Shown here: positions 47,105-60,537 of the stretch, in pieces
How positions within the stretch are numbered: the stretch's first letter is position 1
Layout: each line of letters starts with the position of its first letter
NCBI RefSeq assembly: GCF_964188315.1
Contig: NC_135656.1
Coordinates: 111,662,001-111,726,000 of the forward strand
Length of the DNA stretch: 64,000 nt
From: Podarcis muralis
Taxonomy: Eukaryota
Reading direction: 5' to 3'
The notes under the pieces: model-generated
Databases searched by the model: none
What the model was told of the DNA's origin: nothing
Seen by the model: only the letters and a program-made list of their open reading frames with translations
Program-made: the position numbers and the translations under genes

Positions 47105-48969
47105 ATGAACCACGGTCCTCAGCTGATTGCTTTTACTCGTGCCCAGGAGGAATCAGATCTCTGGAGAGATGGGCATGTCCAGAAAAAAAGCTGCAGAGGC
47201 TCCCGTCTTGCTGGCCAGGAGGAAGGGAAAACAGCGGGTGAGGCAGCTCGCAGCTTCTATGAGAGCCTTTTGGAAGCTCCAGCTAATCCTGCGAGACCCT
47301 CACATAGGAAGCGAAAGGCGCCTTGCGTACGCCACCGACCTGCGCAAGAGCTTCATCCCGTCCAGAACCACCTGGGACCAACAAGTAGCCGCACAGGGAA
47401 CAAGTTCCTGAAAGCCGCCCAGGATGGCGACCTGAAATCTCTGCGGACGCTGGCGGAGAAGGAAGGGTGTGATGTGAACTATAGAGACGATTATTATTGG
47501 ACAGCGATTATGTGTGCAGCTTACGCTGGACGGGTGGAGGCTGTGAGATATCTCCTGAGCCGCGGCGCTGCCTGGGTAGGGGTCTGTGAACCCCAAGGCC
47601 GGGATGCTATGGATTTGGCTGAGGAGGCAGGACACCAGGATGTGGTGGATGCCCTACGGGAGAGTGAAAGGCCACAGGTGAAGGAGGAACCCTCCAGGTG
47701 AGCTTCCTTGTTCCTGAGAATTCAGCTAGGGCTCCTTTGGGAGGAAGAGCAGGATATAAATGTAATAAACTAAATATCCAGTTACTGTCTGGAGAAGAAA
47801 GCCTCTGAATGGGTTTGCTTTTAAATGCTGCTTCGGACTATTCCAGAAACCTAGGGATACCTGCCAATAAAACTGTCAGTTTTGAGAGATTCCCATCCAC
47901 TTAAGACACTTCAACTGACCATCAGTTGTGAACATGGAAAGATCTCCCAGAGCAGCAGTAGTCAATATGTGGCTGGAATACCAACTCCCAGTATCCTTAT
48001 CCAGTGGTTCTTGATGGCTGGGGCTGATGGGGGTTAGAGTCCAAAAGCATCTGGAGGGGGCACCATATTGGCTACCCCTGCTATAGAAGACCATTCCCTG
48101 CCACAAACCGTGCACCCCCTTCCTAGCATATCCAGGCCCTACATCCTTCTTCCCACATCTAGGCCCCAAATCACTAGAAGAGCTTGGGTGGAGCTAACCC
48201 TCTTGACTTGGGTTTGCATTTGTGTTGTTTTAAAACTTCTCTCAATTGGTGTTTTTTATTGTTTTTTCTGTATGCTTGTAAATGTGGGAAAGAGGATTCA
48301 TAAATGATGATGATGATATTTTCATCCAGGCAGCACAGACACAGTAGGTAGGCACTCCCTTTTTTCCCTTTCTTTCTCAGGAGAAGTCTGTATTTGTGTT
48401 TCTTCCTCACTGTTCCCCTGTATGACGCTCTTTGAGGGTTACTACAGTCACAGTTTGTGTGAATGCGGCTTGCCTATTTCCGGTGTAATTTTCCTTTGTT
48501 CTCCAGTCCGCAGCCACCAGCCGAGAGGAACTACTGTGCCGTGTGCCGGACGCACTACAGCGAGGACACAGTGGCGTTGCACGAGCGCTCCACTGCTCAC
48601 CTCTTCAACCGGCGCGACCCACTGCCCCCCACACGCTATCACATCCCAGAGAACAACGTGGGCTTCCGGCTAATGGTCAAGGGAGGTTGGGATCAGGAAG
48701 CTGGCTTGGGGCCTGAGGGCACTGGTCGCAAATTCCCGATCCAGACTGTCCTCAAGCGAGATCAGAAAGGCCTGGGCTTCTGCAGCGACCTCAGACCCAA
48801 AGTCACCCACTTTGACGCCAATGACTCCAGTGCAGTGGAGAGGCCCGTAGAGCAGAGGCCCAGGAAGGAAAGAGCAGCAACGGTGGGGAAACGAGAAGCG
48901 CGCCGCAGAGAGGCCAAGGCCGAAGCTTGGGAACGCAACCTCCGTACTTACATGAACCTTGATATTTGA
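47105..48969 (+). CDS. GPANK1: G-patch domain and ankyrin repeat-containing protein 1, 351 aa
   Basis: Exons 47105-47697 and 48507-48969 (phase 2). Ankyrin repeats (FLKAAQDGDL..WTAIMCAAYAG..RGAAWVGVCE), G-patch (GFRLMVKGGW..GLGPEGTGR..LKRDQKGLG) and C-terminus AWERNLRTYMNL. Confidence 0.96.

Positions 48970-51489: not shown

Positions 51490-51546
<57 letters not shown>
51150..51546 (+). mobile_element. L2 LINE 3' fragment
   Basis: Same family; (ATT)n tail. Confidence 0.85.
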
Positions 51547-51548
<2 letters not shown>

Positions 51549-52126
51549 AATACAACATTAAAAGTGGTTTAAAACAACTTTGTCACACCTCCGGTGACAA
51601 AGGCCAGAGGAAAGAGGTGTGTGTTCATCATTAGCTGAAAGCTAGAGTGAAGGAAAGGCATGCCACAACTTAGGGGCTGCCACAGAGAAGGCCTTCCCCT
51701 GGGCCACAGCCACCCTGAGTTGAGCGTAGCAGAACTACCAAGAGGGCCCCCTTTGACAATATGAACACTGGCAGGGTTCGTAGGGAAGGAGGCTCTCAGA
51801 AAACCTCACCATTGTCTTTTCCGAAAACCAAGCAATGCCTTTAGACTCCCTTAGTGGACTTGCCTTTGAGATGCGGCACCTTTCAAATATGTAATACATT
51901 TGTTAAGCTGTGGACCAGAGTCTACTTCCTCAGATGTGTAGATGTTATCCTGAGTTGTCAGATGTATTATAATTATATGAATAGGCCTAGAGAGAGAAAA
52001 TGTGAGCAGTGAAGTCAGAGGGATATGAAAGGCAGACTCTGAAAATTGCGTAGAAGTAAATAATGGAAACTATATGCCTAGCAGTGTTGACAACACAGGG
52101 CCACAGGTTCCCCATCCCTGACAGAA

Positions 52127-53091
52127 ATGTCAGAACCGTTTTTCAGCCCCCTGTCATCTCTCCCCTTAGATCCCATTCTGCAAATCTGGAACCAACACCA
52201 CGGGTTTGTTTTGCACTGGGAAAAGGTGGCCTTTAGTTTCTCAACGTTGCTATCTCTTCGACGCCGTGTGGACCCAAACAGTGAGCTGTTCTCGTGCCTG
52301 AATCTTGCCTTGAATCAACTGAGCCTAGAGCCCCATGCATAAGAAACAACGCCCGGCTTACCATTGCTGCTGACCGCAAGCTGTTAGAGTGGATTTTTGG
52401 GAAGGGTGACTCTGAGATCACCGTCTTCTGCATCCAAGGCAAAGCCCAATATCATGTCTTTGTGGCCACATGGGAGCAGTACCTCGCCTGCGTCTGCTCC
52501 CAACCCCAGCCCCTGAGCCTGGGGCGTCTTCTTACCACCCGTAGCAAGCTGCGTTGCTGGAGTTCATCTAAGAAGGCCCCATCCTTGGCTTGCTTTGACA
52601 AAGCAGTGGAGTGTTTTGCTATGGAGCCTAGCTCCATCAAGGATGATGCCCAGATGCTGGTGGCATGTGGTGGATGGGCAGTGGAATTTATCTCTGGCCA
52701 AAGTCTCAGTGAGATCTGTGTCTTCTCAAAGGATGGCGTGGCTGACTATAACATCAGTGAGAAGAGTGAGACGTTGTTCCTAGAGCGTCTCCAAGCAGGG
52801 ATTGTCCAGCTGAACTCGGAGAACTTAAGGAAGGCAAGGGATGTGATGGAGTCAGCAGGGGGCAAGAAGTGTTTTGGCGTAGCCTTGTCCAAGTTACAGC
52901 AGGAGCCCTGGTGTGTCCAGAACAATGCCAAGATGGTGGTTATTATGGGCAGCGAAGAAAGGATCGTGTTGAGCTCTGGGAAAGGAGAGAACCAGATTGC
53001 GGTGACCATTTCTGAAAAAGGGATCTGCTATGAAGTGTCTACACAGGGGTGGTGGGAGCTGGTAGCCAGGATGCTTAAAAAGATTCACTGA
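52127..53091 (+). CDS. Uncharacterised single-coding-exon protein with three ~100-aa internal repeats (about 321 aa if one C is restored at 52331-52334); gene or young pseudogene
   Basis: Acceptor ttccccatccctgacAG|AAATG at 52123-52124. ORF 52127-52342 and ORF 52294-53091 join across a 1-nt deletion, and the join is supported by alignment of the internal repeats. No TE similarity recognised. Confidence 0.7.
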
Positions 53092-53140
53092 AGCCTGCCC
53101 TGTGGAACACCCACCAGATGTCAAGGAAATACAACAACTA

Positions 53141-53366
53141 CAGTGGTACCTCGGGTTACATACGCTTCAGGTTACAGACTCTGCTAACCCAGAAATAGTG
53201 CTTCAGGTTAAGAACTTTGCTTCAGGATGAGAACAGAAATCGTGCTCCGGCGGCGTGGCGGCAGCAGGAGGCCCCATTAGCTAAAGTGGTGCTTCAGGTT
53301 AAGAACAGTTTCAGGTTAAGAACGGACCTCCGGAACGAATTAAGTACTTAACCCGAGGTACCACTG
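53141..53366 (+). mobile_element. Tc1/mariner MITE family A
   Basis: Full TIRs; TA on both sides. Confidence 0.88.
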
Positions 53367-53368
53367 TA

Positions 53369-53566
53369 CAGTGTACGCTCGGGTTGCGAACGTGATCCAT
53401 GCAGGATGCACGTTCGCAACCCGCAGCGGCGCGTTTGTGCATGTGTGGGTCGCGATTTAGCGCTTCTGTGCGTGTGCGACCCCCGAAACCCGGAAGTAAC
53501 CCATTCCTGTACTTCCAGGTTTCAAAAAAACGCAACCTGAAGCCTCTGTAACCCGAGGTATGACTG
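53369..53566 (+). mobile_element. Tc1/mariner MITE family B
   Basis: CAGTGTACGCTCGGGTTGC..TAACCCGAGGTATGACTG-TA. Confidence 0.78.
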
Positions 53567-54249
53567 TATCTGACTTTTAGAAGACATCTGAAGGCAGCCC
53601 TTTTTAGGGAAGTTTTTTAAAAAAGTTTTTTTAAAAAATGAATTTTATTAGTATTTTCCACACAACAACAACAACACGAAAGCTATCAAAAAATAACAAT
53701 ACACAACACACAAAAATCAACATTCTAAAACTAAAAACAAAAAACAAAAAAACCCAAACAAATCCATATCTTACAAGTTAATATTATAAACACTAAAACT
53801 TTAGGGAAGTTTTTAATGTTTGGTGTTTTAGTGTGTTTTAGTGTTCTGTTGGGAGCCGCCCAGTGGCTGGGGAAACCCAACCAGATGGGTGGGGTATAAA
53901 TAATAAAATTTTTATTATTAATTTTGTCTCCCAAAACAGATGCCTACAACAGAAATATTACTACTACTAATACTAATGATAAATAATAAATAATAGATAA
54001 ATGATAAATAATAGAGGTAAATATGAGGATTTATGTAACACTTTTCAGTCTTCAAAGCGCTACAATTATCACACTAGCCCTTCCAGCAGCCTTCGCCTGT
54101 CTGACACACGCCAGATGTTTTGAACTACAACTCCCAGCCCCGGGCTGCCTCACATAAACTGGAAAGTAGAGGAGACGACTCTATAGTACAGTCAGAAACC
54201 TAGCAACAAACTATGGGACTGTTCCGGAGGGCTAATTACTTTCTGGTCC

Positions 54250-55322: not shown

Positions 55323-56159
55323 TGAGTGAGTGTGCATTAGGTAATAGTGTGCATTAGATAGATAGTATCAGGTGTCAAGCACAAGGATAATGAACCAGGT
55401 CTTTGTTATAAAACCCAACGGTGGGGCACACGCCCCACAGGAGGGCAATTTGATTTTTTTGGGGGGAGGGATTTGAGAATGAGTTATTAACAGTGAATTT
55501 GTTTGCATTTTGCATTTCTTATGGTTCTAGGGGCCTCATATGCAGTATATAAATATATATTGTGACATACATTCATTTTTCATTTCATTTTTTTTATTTG
55601 TATACCGTCTTTCTAATTTACAATACTCAAGGCAGTTTAGAAGCTGAAAAAACAAAAAATGTACAACTTAGAACAATCTAATGCAATACAAAAATGTGGT
55701 AATAAAACAAGACTTTAAAATAAGCAACCTACATCAAAAAGTAACATTCAACAATTATTAGAACAGTACAAAATAATATCAACATATAAAAGTTAAACAG
55801 AAATCCACTCAACAGTTACAATAAATAATTTCTAAATTTCTAAAATTCTAATACACAAGCAATGTGGATGCCATGTTCTTTGGAAGCTTGTTTGGACCAA
55901 TTAATGGCCTTTTTGGCTTCCTCAACATGTGTAGGAGGTTTTTTTTTAATAATAAGAATTATATGTTACCGGGGGGGGGGGGCGAGTATCAAGATTTTAG
56001 AGACGCTTAGGTGGGGAATGGCCAAAATAAGGTTGGGAACCACTGGTATGAAACATACAGCTAAGCTGAGCAAAGCAGAGATGGAGATGTGTGGTCAGGG
56101 GGAGGGCGCTGGGTACTGATCCTGCATCTCCCCCCACAGCGTCAAGCCCTTTCCACCAC

Positions 56160-58720
56160 ATGCCCGCTCCCATGGCGTCAAGGTACCAGCGTCGCCTGTG
56201 GCGCTACGTCGAGTCCAGCCGCCGCCGCAAGCTGCGCAGGCTCCTGCAGCACCACGGGGAAGCCTTGGACCTGGGCGAGGCGGCCGGGCGCAAGCTCCGA
56301 ACGCCCCTTCACCGGTGCTGCGCCCGACAGGACCACAAAACCGCCATCCTCTTGCTGAAGCATGGAGCAGACCCCTCCGTTCCGGACCGGCGTGGGGACA
56401 CAGCTCTGCATGTGGCTGCCCGACAGGTGGCCCGTAAGGGAGGCACAGGTGAGGCACGGCCTTCGAGTAGCCCCTTGGTCAGCTTATGGACACGCTAAGT
56501 CCTTTGCCCATGGGGCTTTGTGGTTGTCTGCTGTGGGTGGAGGAGATAGAATATGGAAGGATGGAGGTGGAAGGGATTTGTATGGTTTTCCAGGCCAACT
56601 CCCTGACAGGGCAGGAAATCTTCTGCCACAGCATCCCTGATTGGTTGGATAATAGCGTCCCTGATAGGTAGGACTACGGCATCCTTGGCAGACTGTAAAA
56701 TATTAATCAGCCCTATAAAACTTATAACACTTAAAAGATAAAGGTAAAGGGACCCCTGACCATTAGGTCCAGTCGTGACCGACTCTGGGGTTGCGGTGCT
56801 CATCTTGCTTTATTGGCCGAGGGAGCTGGCGTACAGTCACGTGGCCAGCATGACGAAGCCGCTTCTGGCGAACCAGAGCAGCGCACGGAAACGCCCTTTA
56901 CCTTCCCGCCAGAGCGGTACCTATTTATCTACTTGCACTTTGATGTGCTTTCGAACTGGTGGGTTGGCAGGAGCAGGGACTGAGCAACGGGAGCTCACCC
57001 TGTCGCCGGGATTCAAACTGCCGACCTTCTGATCAGCAAGTCCTAGGCTCTGTGGTTTAACCCACAGCGCCACCCGCGTCCCTTTTATAACACTTCAGAA
57101 CGGTTTAAGACACACACACACACAAAATAAACAGCACCCACACAAGTTAAAACCTTGCTGTGAGGATAAAGTGGGGAGGAGAACCGTGTACTCCACCTTG
57201 AACTATTTGTGGAAAGGTGGACTATAAAATTTATGTATTTATGTATTTATCTGTATATACATGGGTGAAGCCAAAGGGGGGTGGGCAGGGAGAGGCAGCT
57301 GCCCCCCAATCAATAAAAATACATAGCTAACTAAGGTCCCCCCCCCCCCCCGCAAAAGGCCTGCCCCCCCACAAAAATCCTGGCTACACCTATGTACAGT
57401 GGTACCTCTGGAAAGCGAATGGGATCCGTTCCAGAGCCCCGGTCGCATCCTGAAGCGAACGCAACCCGCGTCTGTGCATGCGTAGGTCTCTGCTTCCGCG
57501 CATGCACGTGACGTCACTTTGAGCGCATGCGCGAGCGGCGAAACCTGGAAATAACGCGCTCCGTTACTTCTGGGTCGCTGCAGAGCGCAACCCGAAAGCA
57601 CTCAACCTGAAGCAACTTCACCCCGAGGTATGACTATACAGCGGTACCTCGGGTTACATACGCTTCAGGTTACATACGCTTCAGGTTACAGACTCCACTA
57701 ACCCAGAAATATTACCTCGGGTTAAGAACTTTGCTTCAGGATGAGAACAGAAATGTGTGGCGACGCAGCAGCGGGAGGCCCCATTAGCTAAAGTGGTGCT
57801 TCAAGTTAAGAACAGTTTCAGGTTAAGAACGGACCTCCGGAACAAATTAAGTACTTAACCCGAGGTACCACTGTATATATAAAAAGGGCTGGATTTCCTG
57901 TCAGCAGCACATATTGTAGCCATTAGAGGGCACTGGAGAGAGAGTTTGCCTGATGCTGTTAGGTTGGTTGCCATTCATTAATCTTTTTCGTTCTTCCCCT
58001 TCCCCCAGTCTACGAAGACCTGTTTTCGCCCTTGCGAAACCGTTGCCCCTCTGCAATGAGCATCAGGAACAGAGATGGGAAGACGCCAGGAGAACTCCTG
58101 AGGGAAGAGGAAGAGAAATGGGTCCGTGGGGGAAGGGTAAGGTTGGGTTTCAGGTTCTTGCTGACCAGACTGGATGCTGATACCTTCCGTAACCTTTTTT
58201 TGCAGTGCTCTCAGGAGGCGTCTGAGGAAGACAAGGCAGAGGGGGACGCAGAGAGGGAGTGGCGCAGCAAACTCCTCGGCGAATGGGAGGACGAGTATCA
58301 GGAGATGGGCTGGCAATACGAAGGTGAATCTCAGCCTCGCAGAGTCAAAGGTTCTGTGAGAGCCAGTGTAGTGGTTAGAACGTTGAACTAGGCCCCGGGA
58401 GACCTGGGTTCAAATCCACCGCCCCTCAGCTTAACCTACCCTGCAGAGCTGCTCTAAGGATAAAATGGGTCGGGGGAGAGCCATATGCCTCTTTCAGCAG
58501 CTTGCAGGACAGGTGGGATATAGATTTTATTTATTATTATTATTATTTGCACTGTGTTTGGCCTGCATATTTTTTAGTCCCAGAGCAAAGTAATAAAAAT
58601 AAACACAGGCCTGAACAAAAATTCATCATCATCATCATCATAAACTTTATTGCACTAGCCAAAGGCCATGGCATCATTCACAAAGGAAACAAAAAGAAAA
58701 ACAACAATAACCATAAAAAC

Positions 58721-58761
<41 letters not shown>

Positions 58762-60537
58762 GTAATTTATTTTATTTATTCCCCCACCCTCCCCGGCCAG
58801 AGCTGGGCTCAGGGCAGCTAACACCAGTAAAATTACAGTAAAAACATAATAGGGGAAAAACCAATTTAAAATACAGCTTAAAATGCAATTTAAAATGCAG
58901 CCTCATTTTAAAAGTAGCCCATAGATCAAAACCATAAGGGGAGGGAAACATAAGGGTCAGACTGAGTCCAAACCAAAGGCCAGGCAGAACAGCTCTGTCT
59001 TGCAGGCCCTACCCACAAGCACAATTTAAATGCCGTAGAATATTAATCAGCTTCAGCCAAAGTTGTGTTATGGTATCTTCTGATCACTTCCACAAGGCAC
59101 AGGTCAAATCTGTGTCCAGGGCAGCTGTTTACCAGCTCCATCTGGTACGTAGGCTGAGACCCTATCTGCCTGCAGACTGTCTCACCAGAGTGGTACATGC
59201 TCTGGTTATCTCCCGCTTGGACTACTGCAATGCGCTCTATGTGGGGCTACCTTTGAAGGTGACTCGGAAACTACAACTAATCCAGAATGCGGCAGCTAGA
59301 CTGGTGACTGGGGGCGGCCGCCGAGACCATATAACACCGGTCTTGAAGGACCTACATTGGCTCCCAGTACGTTTCCGAGCACAATTCAAAGTGTTGGTGC
59401 TGACCTTTAAAGCCCTAAACGGCCTCGGTCCAGTATACCTGAAGGAGCGTCTCCACCCCCATCATTCTGCCCGGACGCTGAGGTCCAACGCCGAGGGCCT
59501 TCTGGCGGTTCCCTCATTGTGAGAAGCAAAGCTACAGGGAACCAGGCAGAGGGCCTTCTCAGTAGTGGCGCCCGCCCTGTGGAACGCCCTTCCAGCAGAT
59601 GTCAAAGCGATAAACAACTACCTGACATTCAGAAGACATCTTAAGGCAGCCCTGTTCAGGGAAGTTTTTAACGTGTGATATTTTACTGTATTTGTGGTTT
59701 TTATGGAAGCCGCCCAGAGTGGCTGGGGAGGCCCAGCCAGATGGGCGGGGTATAAATAATAAATTATTATTATTATTATATTATTATTATAATTGCCATT
59801 TTGTCTGAGAATTGTCATCCCAGAAATTTAAATAAGTTCTCTTCCTCCTCCTTGGTTCACAAAGCTGTTATGGGGAATCCGATGGTGTGTCTGGCCAACT
59901 GCCGTCCGAGTGCCATGTTCAGCTGGGTGTATAACGGGTGAGACGATCCTTTAAGTTGTATTCTCAAATTCCTTTTCCCTTTTCGCCCTTCCCAGAGGAT
60001 TTCTACACTGCTGGCCCAGACACGGAAACCTACGAGGACTGGGCCGACCGCATCGCTCGCGAATACAGGCAGAGGCGCAGCCGGGACAACGAATGCCTTC
60101 GCCAGAGGCCTAAAGTGGAAGCGCAGAAGCCTCTGCCTAGGTTGGGGAGCCTCCGTGAGGAAGAACACCTTCTCTACGAAAAGAGGGCCCGAGCCAAGGA
60201 AAGGGAACTGAGGGAAGCCAAGAAGCTGCGCTACGAGGAAGGCTGCAGCCAGGTCTTCTCCGCTGACGGTTCGCGCCTTTTGAGATACGTGGACATTCCC
60301 TGGCCGTGCCCGGCTGGGACACCAGAGGAGATGGCCGCCGTGGCGCTCCACGGCATGGAGCCCTCCGACAAAGCGGCTTACCGGCGCTTCCTGCGGCGCC
60401 AGCAGGCCCTCTGGCACCCGGACAAGTTTGCCCAACGCTGCGGCGCGCGCTTGGCAGAACAGGATCGCCGCCGGATATTGGACACTGTCACGGCGCTGTC
60501 CCAAGCCTTCAACCGGCTAGCAGAAGCTTGCAAATAA
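56160..60537 (+). CDS. NFKBIL1: NF-kappa-B inhibitor-like protein 1 (358 aa from ATG 56160; 384 aa if exon 1 from 54387 is coding)
   Basis: Exons 56140-56448, 58009-58136, 58206-58323 and 59996-60537. Ankyrin repeats (PLHRCCAR..GADP..DRRGDTALHVAARQ), RCPSAM..N.DG.TPG, EREWRSKL.GE.EDE, D.PWPCP and WHPDKF..TALSQAFN. AATAAA at 60567. Confidence 0.95.
56738..57082 (-). mobile_element. Sauria SINE
   Basis: Consensus match; TSD TTATAACACTT. Confidence 0.9.
57397..57636 (-). mobile_element. Tc1/mariner MITE, family B-related
   Basis: TA-CAGTGGTACCTC..CCCGAGGTATGACTA; internal GCGCATGCG-rich sequence like family B. Confidence 0.7.
57639..57873 (+). mobile_element. Tc1/mariner MITE family A
   Basis: Full TIRs; abuts the previous MITE at a shared TA. 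Confidence 0.85.
58358..58520 (+). mobile_element. tRNA-derived SINE with L2-like tail (Squam/MIR-like), degenerate
   Basis: AGTGTAGTGGTTAGA..CTGGGTTCAAATCC head followed by CAGCTTAACCTACC..AGGATAAAATGG; similar tails at about 30150-30250 and 57150-57230. Confidence 0.55.
58715..59010 (-). mobile_element. L2-like LINE 3' end, second subfamily
   Basis: Reverse complement of 2700-2891; (AAT)n tail. Confidence 0.6.
59097..59790 (+). mobile_element. L2 LINE 3' fragment
   Basis: ORF2 C-terminus with a premature stop at 59522; 3' UTR and tail. Confidence 0.9.

What the first reader, a model, noticed from the sequence alone, without database searches (positions are those of the whole stretch)
52127..53091. 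Orphan gene built from three tandem ~100-aa repeats, hidden by a single-base frameshift, between GPANK1 and NFKBIL1
Seen: the ATG at 52127 sits two bases after a good splice acceptor. Its ORF stops at 52342, while an overlapping 265-codon ORF runs to 53091. Adding one C to the CCCC run at 52331-52334 gives a continuous ~321-aa protein with three aligned repeats. Mid-repeat motif: CLNLALNQLSLEPPCIRNNARLTI / CFDKAVECFAMEPSSIKDDAQMLV / CFGVALSKLQQEPWCVQNNAKMVV. End-repeat motif: LEWIFGKGDSEITVFCIQGKAQYHV / VEFISGQSLSEICVFSKDGVADYNI / IVLSSGKGENQIAVTISEKGICYEV. The repeat register crosses the frameshift, so both ORFs are one gene. Established: the human gene next to GPANK1 is C6orf47, which this does not resemble as I recall it. 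Inference: an uncharacterised alpha/beta repeat family in the lizard MHC-linked region, either intact (homopolymer assembly error) or recently disabled. I could not assign it to any family.
Basis: partly seen in the sequence, partly recalled or inferred. Interest (0 to 1): 0.82.

Follow-up and report, generated by a model that had tools for sequence, protein, structure and literature searches.

The report
Undescribed reptile repeat-domain gene, frameshifted only in reference
The two overlapping reading frames are one real lizard gene, conserved between GPANK1 and NFKBIL1 across squamates. It encodes three copies of a ~97-residue protein domain that matches no described family or solved fold, and its frameshift is peculiar to the reference sequence, not to the species.

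Summary
ORFs 52127-52342 and 52294-53091 (+) overlap in different frames and join near the CCCC run at 52331-52334.

Contigs from two independent DNA runs of the same species carry one extra G behind 52335 (CCCCA-G-TGC). So the gene is intact in the species. The break is either a reference consensus error or a rare private allele. The missing base is this G, not a fifth C.

Intact orthologues of 291-321 aa exist in Rhineura, five geckos, Varanus and Elgaria. The GPANK1-gene-NFKBIL1 order was confirmed in Rhineura and is consistent in Heteronotia; in Paroedura only GPANK1 lies alongside. Pairwise dN/dS is 0.18-0.37.

The three repeats are highly significant (z 13-25). The ~97-aa unit occurs 1-20 times per protein in a family whose named members are all squamates, turtles or crocodilians and all "uncharacterized". 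Many paralogues look like type II membrane glycoproteins. This orthogroup has no signal peptide or membrane segment.

A confident unit model (pLDDT 91) shows two helices, a short helix, a four-stranded meander and a closing helix. It has no Pfam match and no fold match in PDB, Swiss-Prot, viral or ESM Atlas libraries.

Function is unknown. My best guess is a soluble, non-enzymatic binding module.

The parts
52122..52124 (+). Candidate splice acceptor (cag after a pyrimidine-rich stretch) for a 5' leader exon
   Evidence: Sequence only. The Heteronotia orthologue's gene model also splices a short upstream exon onto the main coding exon. RNA coverage here was too thin to test it.
52127..53091 (+). 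Whole coding region of the reference lineage. It would give 321 aa if the reference carried the extra base seen in other individuals.
   Evidence: DNA depth is at single-copy level, 10-12 as in the unique flanks.
52226..52228 (+). GTG in the reference and in X4; ATG in the diverged X12 lineage. This is the start position that corresponds to the orthologues' start.
   Evidence: 52226 G>A makes an ATG. 52155 C>A puts a stop at codon 10 of the 52127 ORF in that lineage.
52334..52335 (+). The break: two leftover bases (CA) of a broken codon
   Evidence: table 4: 'put in behind 52335: G' in X4 (depth 10 of 10) and X12 (11.8 of 11.8). Each spanning contig carries exactly one gap.
52226..52506 (+). 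Repeat unit 1 (spans the break)
   Evidence: Unit HMM and orthologue alignment
52507..52803 (+). Repeat unit 2 (the unit modelled with AlphaFold2)
   Evidence: pLDDT 91, pTM 0.82
52804..53088 (+). Repeat unit 3, followed by the stop at 53089-53091
47105..48969 (+). Upstream neighbour GPANK1 (ankyrin exon and G-patch exon ORFs)
   Evidence: ORFs. The same neighbour (Ank + G-patch) lies upstream in Rhineura, Heteronotia and Paroedura.
56091..60537 (+). Downstream neighbour NFKBIL1 (ankyrin exon and C-terminal exon ORFs)
   Evidence: ORFs. An ankyrin gene lies downstream in Rhineura.

Best explanation
This is a genuine protein-coding gene with a single coding exon. It is the squamate-conserved gene between GPANK1 and NFKBIL1.

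It encodes three tandem copies of an undescribed ~97-residue alpha/beta domain: helix, helix, short helix, four-stranded antiparallel meander, closing helix. The domain defines a family found here only in non-avian reptiles, with 1 to 20 units per protein.

The 1-nt frameshift belongs to the reference sequence only. Other individuals of the species carry an extra G after 52335 and an open frame.

Shown here: gene identity, repeats, synteny, purifying selection, an intact allele in the species, and the absence of any known family or fold match.

Inferred: the protein lacks a signal peptide and a membrane segment and is poor in N-glycosylation sequons, while many paralogues look like type II membrane glycoproteins that display the same units outside the cytosol. 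I therefore infer that this orthogroup is a soluble intracellular version of the module. No unit has a conserved catalytic-type constellation. The conserved positions are mostly hydrophobic core residues, an E-P turn and an S-G-x-G hairpin. So it most likely acts as a non-enzymatic binding or scaffold array rather than an enzyme.
For: ORFs and break.

Reads:
- X4 has 3 substitutions over 1460 nt, and X12 has 22 over 1063 nt.
- Both carry the inserted G, each as the only gap in the spanning contig.
- Depth is single-copy.
- A few RNA reads and one RNA contig lie over the ORF.

Orthologues.

Synteny and intronless coding exon.

dN/dS is 0.18-0.37, and 0.36 for the window against Rhineura.

Repeats: z = 13-25; three units found by HMM.

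Family range: 58 cluster representatives. Every named one is a squamate, turtle or crocodilian, and all are 'uncharacterized'.

Unit copy number is 1-20. The Chrysemys 1934-aa protein, with 20 units, comes from one 5805-nt exon.

Structure: pLDDT 91.

No match was found in:
- Pfam
- PDB sequences
- Foldseek against PDB
- Swiss-Prot models
- viral models
- ESM Atlas

Topology of paralogues:
- K/R count is 2.7 in the N-flank against 1.3 in the C-flank of the membrane segment.
- Sequons number 1.25 per 100 aa after the membrane segment, against 0.20 in this orthogroup.
Against: - The function is wholly inferred. No experiment or characterised relative supports it.
- RNA support in this species is thin: depth about 1 in one bulk run and one 165-nt contig in another.
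- No lacertid orthologue is annotated in the protein databases searched.
- The reference haplotype also carries a private Ser at a consensus Gly of the S-G-x-G hairpin (52702). The species has non-consensus residues at three conserved positions of unit 1. Some relaxation of constraint in this lineage therefore cannot be excluded.
- An unrecognised upstream exon could add a signal or anchor.
- The contigs laid are assemblies, which drop minor alleles, so allele frequencies are unknown.
Confidence: 0.8

Rival explanations
1. The frameshift is a real null allele carried by the reference individual (a polymorphic pseudogene), not an assembly error.
For: The deleted base is not inside the homopolymer but next to it, which is less typical of homopolymer-length errors. 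The reference also differs from every laid run at 52702 and 52884, so it may simply be a distinct haplotype. One of those private changes hits a consensus Gly.
Against: No run holds all the reference's 31-mers over the ORF; the best share is 0.93. That is what reference-only errors at 2-3 sites would give. Long-term dN/dS is 0.36, so any disabling event is very recent. Two individuals from different studies are intact.
Confidence: 0.4
2. The protein is not cytosolic. An upstream exon spliced to the acceptor at 52124 supplies a signal peptide or membrane anchor, so that it resembles its type II paralogues.
For: There is a plausible acceptor two bases before the ATG. A gecko model has an upstream coding exon. 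The alligator paralogue has small upstream exons. Most paralogues are membrane-anchored.
Against: Thirteen sequences of this orthogroup, eight of them named NCBI or GenBank gene models, show no hydrophobic segment. The gecko's extra exon encodes 6 hydrophilic residues. In the X12 lineage an in-frame stop closes the frame upstream of 52226. tblastn found no paralogue-like N-terminal exon in the window. Sequon density is sixfold lower than in the anchored paralogues.
Confidence: 0.12
3. It is the extremely diverged reptile orthologue of mammalian C6orf47, the single-exon 294-aa gene next to GPANK1.
For: It has one coding exon and a similar length: C6orf47 has 1 exon and 294/299 aa (PMC1654159). 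From my own knowledge of the human map, it sits in the same slot immediately downstream of GPANK1 on the same strand. No other ORF with a Pfam match lies between GPANK1 and NFKBIL1.
Against: The exhaustive profile search returned no named hit outside reptiles. A fold search of reviewed UniProt models found nothing. There is no Pfam hit. As I recall it, C6orf47 is largely disordered with a hydrophobic C-terminus, not three alpha/beta domains. C6orf47 was not found in frog, so it may be a mammalian novelty.
Confidence: 0.06
4. It is a repeat-derived or retrocopied ORF without function, open by chance or decaying.
For: The coding region is intronless. Very abundant MITE copies lie immediately downstream. 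Short high-copy segments lie just upstream.
Against: Depth over the ORF is single-copy. The position is conserved in Rhineura and in two geckos. dN/dS is well below 1. The three units are only 25-34% identical to each other yet 51-68% identical to the matching unit of orthologues, so the triplication is old and has been maintained.
Confidence: 0.03

Closest known systems
NCBI predicted 'uncharacterized protein' LOC133382415 (Rhineura floridana), LOC132571429 (Heteronotia binoei), LOC143834384 (Paroedura picta), LOC125430040 (Sphaerodactylus townsendi), LOC123021072 (Varanus komodoensis), LOC134396007 (Elgaria multicarinata)
   Same: Three units, 291-313 aa, and no signal peptide or membrane segment. 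Identity over the aligned part is 44-68%. Where context was fetched, there is a single coding exon or a main coding exon. GPANK1 lies upstream in Rhineura, Heteronotia and Paroedura. An ankyrin gene lies downstream in Rhineura.
   Different: The reference copy has a 1-nt deletion, and its lineage lacks an ATG at the orthologous start. It uses, or may use, ATG 52127 instead, which adds 33 non-conserved residues.
Membrane-anchored paralogues (e.g. Rhineura LOC133380885, Eublepharis LOC129329448, Alligator Y1Q_0024449, Pelodiscus LOC112544940, snake LOC116502908-like)
   Same: They share the same ~97-aa unit, with conserved L3, C29, F37, E40-P41, N47, S63-G64-x-G66, Y81 and R94. The main coding exon is intronless.
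   Different: They have two or three units preceded by a cytoplasmic tail and a membrane segment, and some also have a C-terminal membrane segment. They are rich in N-x-S/T sequons and are predicted to be exoplasmic.
Turtle giant arrays (Chrysemys LOC135974678, 1934 aa; Pelodiscus LOC142825960, 1281 aa)
   Same: Same unit, no signal peptide or membrane segment, and a single exon in Chrysemys, the only one whose locus was fetched.
   Different: They have 13-20 units instead of three. Units are 45-51% identical to each other at the median, so the amplification is younger.
C6orf47 (mammalian MHC class III)
   Same: It is a single-exon gene of about 294 aa adjacent to GPANK1 (PMC1654159 for exon number and length; the position is from my own knowledge).
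   Different: No sequence, Pfam or fold similarity was detected here. It could not be compared directly.
REDD1 (PDB 3lq9), the best structural-alignment row
   Same: It is a two-layer alpha/beta sandwich of helices on a four-stranded sheet. 84 residues align at rmsd 4.1.

Membership tests
Unnamed reptile ~97-aa tandem-domain family (LOC133382415-like) | Matches the unit profile built from orthologues, in tandem and without linkers | tested here: met
   three units in the window, with HMM coverage of 38-94 (after the break), 1-94 and 2-94. The part of unit 1 before the break aligns to orthologues in the other frame.
Unnamed reptile ~97-aa tandem-domain family (LOC133382415-like) | Conserved unit positions: L3, L8, C29, F37, E40-P41, N47, F61, S63-G64-x-G66, V72, Y81, R94 | tested here: met
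   One search gives the frequencies. By eye, the window's units keep C29, E40-P41, G64 and Y81 in all three units. Deviations are F for S63 and C for R94 in unit 1, D for N47 in unit 2, and S for G66 in unit 2, the last in the reference only (G in X4 and X12).
Unnamed reptile ~97-aa tandem-domain family (LOC133382415-like) | Orthogroup synteny: GPANK1 upstream and NFKBIL1 downstream, all on one strand | tested here: met
   Window. Rhineura. Heteronotia. Paroedura, GPANK1 side only.
C6orf47 | Detectable sequence or profile similarity to mammalian C6orf47 | tested here: inconclusive
   No mammalian protein was among the named hits of the exhaustive profile search. There was no Pfam hit and no Swiss-Prot model hit. 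No tool-supplied C6orf47 sequence was available for a direct profile-profile test.
C6orf47 | Single-exon gene of about 294 aa next to GPANK1 | tested here: met
   Exon number and length come from PMC1654159. The window gene has a single coding exon of 288-321 aa, 3.1 kb downstream of GPANK1.
PP1_inhibitor / CPI-17 (PF05361) | Pfam gathering score reached by the protein | tested here: not met
   The window pieces gave no hit at E <= 1. Only the Pelodiscus paralogue reaches 31 bits, through summed weak stretches with none significant alone. 3 of 37 two-unit segments match at best E 0.003. The predicted fold has a beta-sheet, unlike a helical bundle.
Transposable element or processed pseudogene | Multi-copy in the genome, or no conserved position | tested here: not met
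   Word depth is 10-12 across the ORF, as in the unique flanks, against millions for the adjacent MITE. Synteny is conserved. dN/dS is 0.18-0.37.

The most novel reading that the evidence does not exclude
The gene is the positionally conserved, soluble member of a reptile-restricted superfamily built on a protein fold with no solved or described relative. The superfamily exists in cytosolic, surface-displayed (type II glycoprotein) and giant 20-unit forms. It sits in the MHC class III region: the window gene between GPANK1 and NFKBIL1, a turtle member next to a Ly6-like gene, and an alligator member near an Ig V-set exon. On this reading it would be a lineage-specific recognition or regulatory system of non-avian reptiles, lost or never gained in birds and mammals, and filling the slot that C6orf47 occupies in mammals.
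Probability: 0.25. Interest if true: 0.8.

Novelty: categorically new. Interest (0 to 1): 0.55.

Why it matters
The ~97-residue domain has a confident predicted structure. It has dozens of members across squamates, turtles and crocodilians, and copy number varies from 1 to 20 units. It has both soluble and membrane-displayed forms. Even so, it has no Pfam entry, no literature and no structural relative, so it is a gap in the catalogue of vertebrate protein families.

Its conserved place in the MHC class III block makes it relevant to how that region evolved outside mammals, and it gives reptile immunogenomics a concrete candidate to test.

There is also a practical point. A single reference-specific indel hid the gene. 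This may be why no orthologue from the window's closest relatives appeared in the protein searches.

"New" here means an undescribed family. Orthologues already sit in databases as unnamed predictions, and no function has been shown.

Tried and rejected
Searches that found nothing:
- Pfam scans of both window pieces, of ten paralogues and of 37 two-unit segments gave no consistent family. The PP1_inhibitor hit in one turtle paralogue is made of summed sub-threshold stretches, and I reject it.
- PDB sequence searches with the protein and with the unit profile gave only E > 0.3.
- Foldseek of the 3-unit and 1-unit models against PDB gave nothing at E <= 0.001.
- The Swiss-Prot model library, the viral library and ESM Atlas by shape and by features gave nothing credible. 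PepSY-like and YjbR-like rows at TM 0.46 reflect only a generic helix-on-sheet arrangement.

A weak lead:
- AFDB clusters returned reptile homologues plus four weak invertebrate 'uncharacterized' rows: A0A3M6UMJ9, A0A210PXK3, K1RCB9 and A0A7D9E2I0 (TM 0.55-0.69).
- Only the first covers the whole unit at acceptable rmsd.
- Their organisms were not shown. From memory of the accession ranges I believe they are coral and bivalve proteins. This is a lead, not a finding.

Other checks:
- Literature searches for six family LOC identifiers and for GPANK1/NFKBIL1 in squamates gave nothing relevant.
- tblastn of paralogue N-termini against the window found no second copy and no anchor exon.
- ORFs between GPANK1 and NFKBIL1 other than this gene have no credible Pfam match; the one hit (DUF3915, 18.6 bits against a cut-off of 26.9) is below threshold.
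- Earlier-findings look-ups gave nothing that bears on this locus.

Ideas dropped:
- I considered a membrane-binding role for the Trp-rich C-terminal helix. That helix is simply the closing helix present in every unit.
- Conserved cysteines do not form a consistent pairing pattern across units. C29 is 89% conserved but its possible partners only 40-51%, so I make no disulfide claim.

Full report
**Observation**

- An ATG at 52127 lies two bases after a cag at 52122-52124. It opens a 71-codon ORF that stops at 52340-52342.
- A 265-codon ORF in the next frame runs from 52294 to 53091.
- The two frames can be joined at the CCCC run (52331-52334) and the CA that follows it.
- The quoted motifs are present.

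**One gene**

A word-indexed search with the 265-aa ORF found seven intact proteins of 291-321 aa, 52-68% identical.
- Named ones are Rhineura floridana LOC133382415 and proteins from Heteronotia, Sphaerodactylus and Gekko.
- Three more come from unnamed assemblies.
- A later profile search added Paroedura, Varanus and Elgaria.

In the alignment, the window's frame-1 piece and frame-2 piece abut exactly at ...LSLEP | CIRNNA.... The orthologues have one variable residue (P, L or S) at the junction.

**The frameshift is not a property of the species**

I laid four runs on 51600-53400.
- A DNA contig from run X4 spans 51665-53123 with three substitutions and one gap.
- A DNA contig from run X12 comes from a different study and is about 2% diverged. 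It spans 52051-53112 with 22 substitutions and one gap.
- In both, the single gap is a G inserted behind 52335 (CCCCA-G-TGC). This restores one frame, reading Pro-Gln-Cys.

So the base missing from the reference is this G, not a fifth C.

The reference is also alone at two other sites.
- At 52702 it has A where X4 and X12 have G. This is Ser against Gly at the consensus second glycine of the S-G-x-G hairpin.
- At 52884 it has C where X4, X12 and the RNA contig of X19 have T.

No run holds more than 0.93 of the reference's sampled 31-mers over the ORF. That is about what two or three reference-only sites would cost.

This leaves two readings that I cannot separate: consensus errors in the assembly (I put this at about 0.55-0.6) or a private or rare haplotype with a real null allele (about 0.4).

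**Start codon**

In the X12 lineage, 52155 C>A puts a stop at codon 10 of the 52127 ORF. In the same lineage, 52226 G>A turns GTG into ATG. That ATG is exactly where the orthologues begin, a few residues before ...SFSxLLSL.... Two changes in one codon (52259 and 52261) together give Arg>Trp, not a stop.

So that lineage encodes a 288-aa protein like those of other squamates. The 33-residue extension from ATG 52127 is dispensable or non-coding.

The RNA reads of run X23 carry the X12-type variants and start by about 52149, so the transcript extends upstream of 52226. They have the first mate on the minus strand, which in the usual stranded libraries means plus-strand RNA. Coverage is very low: depth is about 1, with about 12% of the run read.

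**Selection and age**

Synteny is conserved.
- Rhineura has an ankyrin plus G-patch gene (GPANK1) upstream and an ankyrin gene (NFKBIL1) downstream.
- Heteronotia and Paroedura have GPANK1 upstream.
- In the window, GPANK1 ORFs lie at 47105-48969 and NFKBIL1 ORFs at 56091-60537, all on the plus strand.
- The coding region is one exon in Rhineura, Paroedura and Varanus. Heteronotia adds a six-residue leader exon.

Nei-Gojobori dN/dS between orthologues is 0.18-0.37.
- It is 0.36 for the window against Rhineura (dS 0.48) and 0.30 between two geckos.
- Using the gecko distances as an outgroup, I estimate by hand that the window lineage evolves about twice as fast as Rhineura in both dN and dS, with a similar ratio (about 0.38 against 0.33). 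There is therefore no sign of long-term decay.

Between the window and X12, downstream of 52226, there are seven synonymous changes and about nine replacements. In four of the replacements X12 keeps the orthologues' residue. This fits moderate constraint.

**Repeats and family**

In the intact Rhineura protein, the three units align with z = 25, 15.5 and 13 against shuffles, and none of 500 shuffles reached the observed score.

The units of one protein are only 25-34% identical to each other. The window's unit 2 is 51-68% identical to unit 2 of orthologues. So the triplication predates the squamate radiation.

An exhaustive HMMER search of 1.84 billion cluster representatives with the orthologue profile found 58 proteins at E <= 0.001.
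- Every one that carries a name is from a squamate, a turtle or a crocodilian, and all are 'uncharacterized' or 'hypothetical'.
- Two Platysternon entries carry names (MoeA, DnaK) that I take to be mislabels.
- I saw no bird, mammal, amphibian or fish protein.

A unit HMM counts 1 to 20 units per protein. The Chrysemys protein of 1934 aa has 20 units in a single 5805-nt exon. Its units are 51% identical at the median.

**Two architectural classes**

This orthogroup and the turtle arrays have no hydrophobic segment.

Thirty-eight sequences of 250-480 aa, including isoforms and near-duplicates, have a membrane segment 30-145 residues from the N-terminus, followed by two or three units. Some add a C-terminal membrane segment. 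Anolis LOC100554454 starts with a signal-like segment.

In the anchored class:
- K/R counts are 2.7 on the N-side against 1.3 on the C-side of the segment.
- N-x-S/T sequons are 1.25 per 100 residues after the segment, against 0.52 before it and 0.20 in the window's orthogroup.

I infer that the anchored paralogues are type II glycoproteins with the units outside the cytosol, and that the window's protein is a leaderless soluble form.

**Structure**

AlphaFold2 on the window's unit 2 with a 100-unit alignment gives pLDDT 91 and pTM 0.82. The elements are helix 5-18, helix 28-37, short helix 42-45, strands 48-54, 57-63, 68-75 and 78-85, and helix 88-96.

The three-unit model is less certain in its domain packing (pLDDT 78, pTM 0.53).

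Conserved positions are L3, L8, C29, F37, E40, P41, N47, F61, S63, G64, G66, V72, Y81 and R94. These are a hydrophobic core plus two turns. There is no catalytic-type set, hence my guess of a binding or scaffold module.

No library gave a credible match:
- Pfam
- PDB by sequence
- Foldseek against PDB
- Swiss-Prot models
- viral models
- ESM Atlas

AFDB clusters returned the reptile family itself and four weak invertebrate 'uncharacterized' rows. These are leads only.

**Comparison with the known**

The nearest things are the unnamed database predictions listed above. The gene is a member of that undescribed family by unit profile, motif and synteny.

C6orf47 is the only described gene with the same position and gene structure. 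It has one exon and 294 aa, and it was not found in frog (PMC1654159). Its position relative to GPANK1 is from my own knowledge. No similarity of any kind was detected, but I could not run a direct profile-profile test, so I leave that reading at about 6%.

A repeat or retrocopy origin is excluded by single-copy depth, synteny and dN/dS.

**Verdict**

This is a real gene of an undescribed, reptile-restricted domain family. It is intact in the species and broken only in the reference sequence.

Function is unknown. The soluble, non-enzymatic binding-module reading is an inference from architecture and conservation, not a result.

Noticed in passing
window 53139-53368: A MITE-like element with perfect 20-bp terminal inverted repeats (tacagtggtacctcgggtta ... 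taacccgaggtaccactgta) lies 48 bp after the stop codon. Word depth over it is in the millions in the DNA runs, and it is abundant in the RNA runs. A second similar element seems to follow at about 53371-53568.
   Followed up: partly
window 51661-51721 and 52088-52121: Two short segments have elevated depth (about 2500 and about 530, against 10-15 in the flanks). In other genomic copies they are joined to each other (51686>52100) and to the MITE start (52117-52121>53139), with only 21-25 nt on the short side. They look like pieces of a composite repeat that are collinear with the gene, and they are unexplained. The ORF itself is single-copy.
   Followed up: no
window 51500-51547: A perfect (TTA)16 microsatellite lies upstream of the gene.
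   Followed up: no
window 52155, 52226 (run X12 and RNA run X23): A ~2% diverged lineage under the same species label has swapped start codons. It has a stop in the upstream extension and a new ATG at the orthologous start. The bulk RNA-seq run carries this lineage's variants, so the public data for the species mix deep lineages.
   Followed up: partly
L002 10001-15805 (Chrysemys picta): A single 5805-nt exon encodes 20 tandem units of the same domain (1934 aa). There is no signal peptide or membrane segment and no called neighbour within 10 kb. Pelodiscus has a 13-unit protein and at least two more family genes on one 496-kb contig.
   Followed up: partly
L004 3411-3748 (Alligator mississippiensis): An Ig V-set-like exon lies about 14 kb upstream of the alligator family member. 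An older 704-aa model (P0071) fuses two Ig V-set domains to it, which is probably a gene-model fusion. It shows that Ig-superfamily genes are neighbours there.
   Followed up: partly
L008 18967-20986 (Caretta caretta): The sea-turtle four-unit member has a small neighbour with a faint Activin_recp (Ly6/three-finger-like) hit. This would fit an MHC class III LY6G-like neighbourhood. It was not verified.
   Followed up: no
L007 (Rhineura floridana, same chromosome as L001): The Rhineura type II paralogue LOC133380885 is also a single exon. It lies about 4.9 Mb from the GPANK1-linked orthologue on the same chromosome.
   Followed up: no
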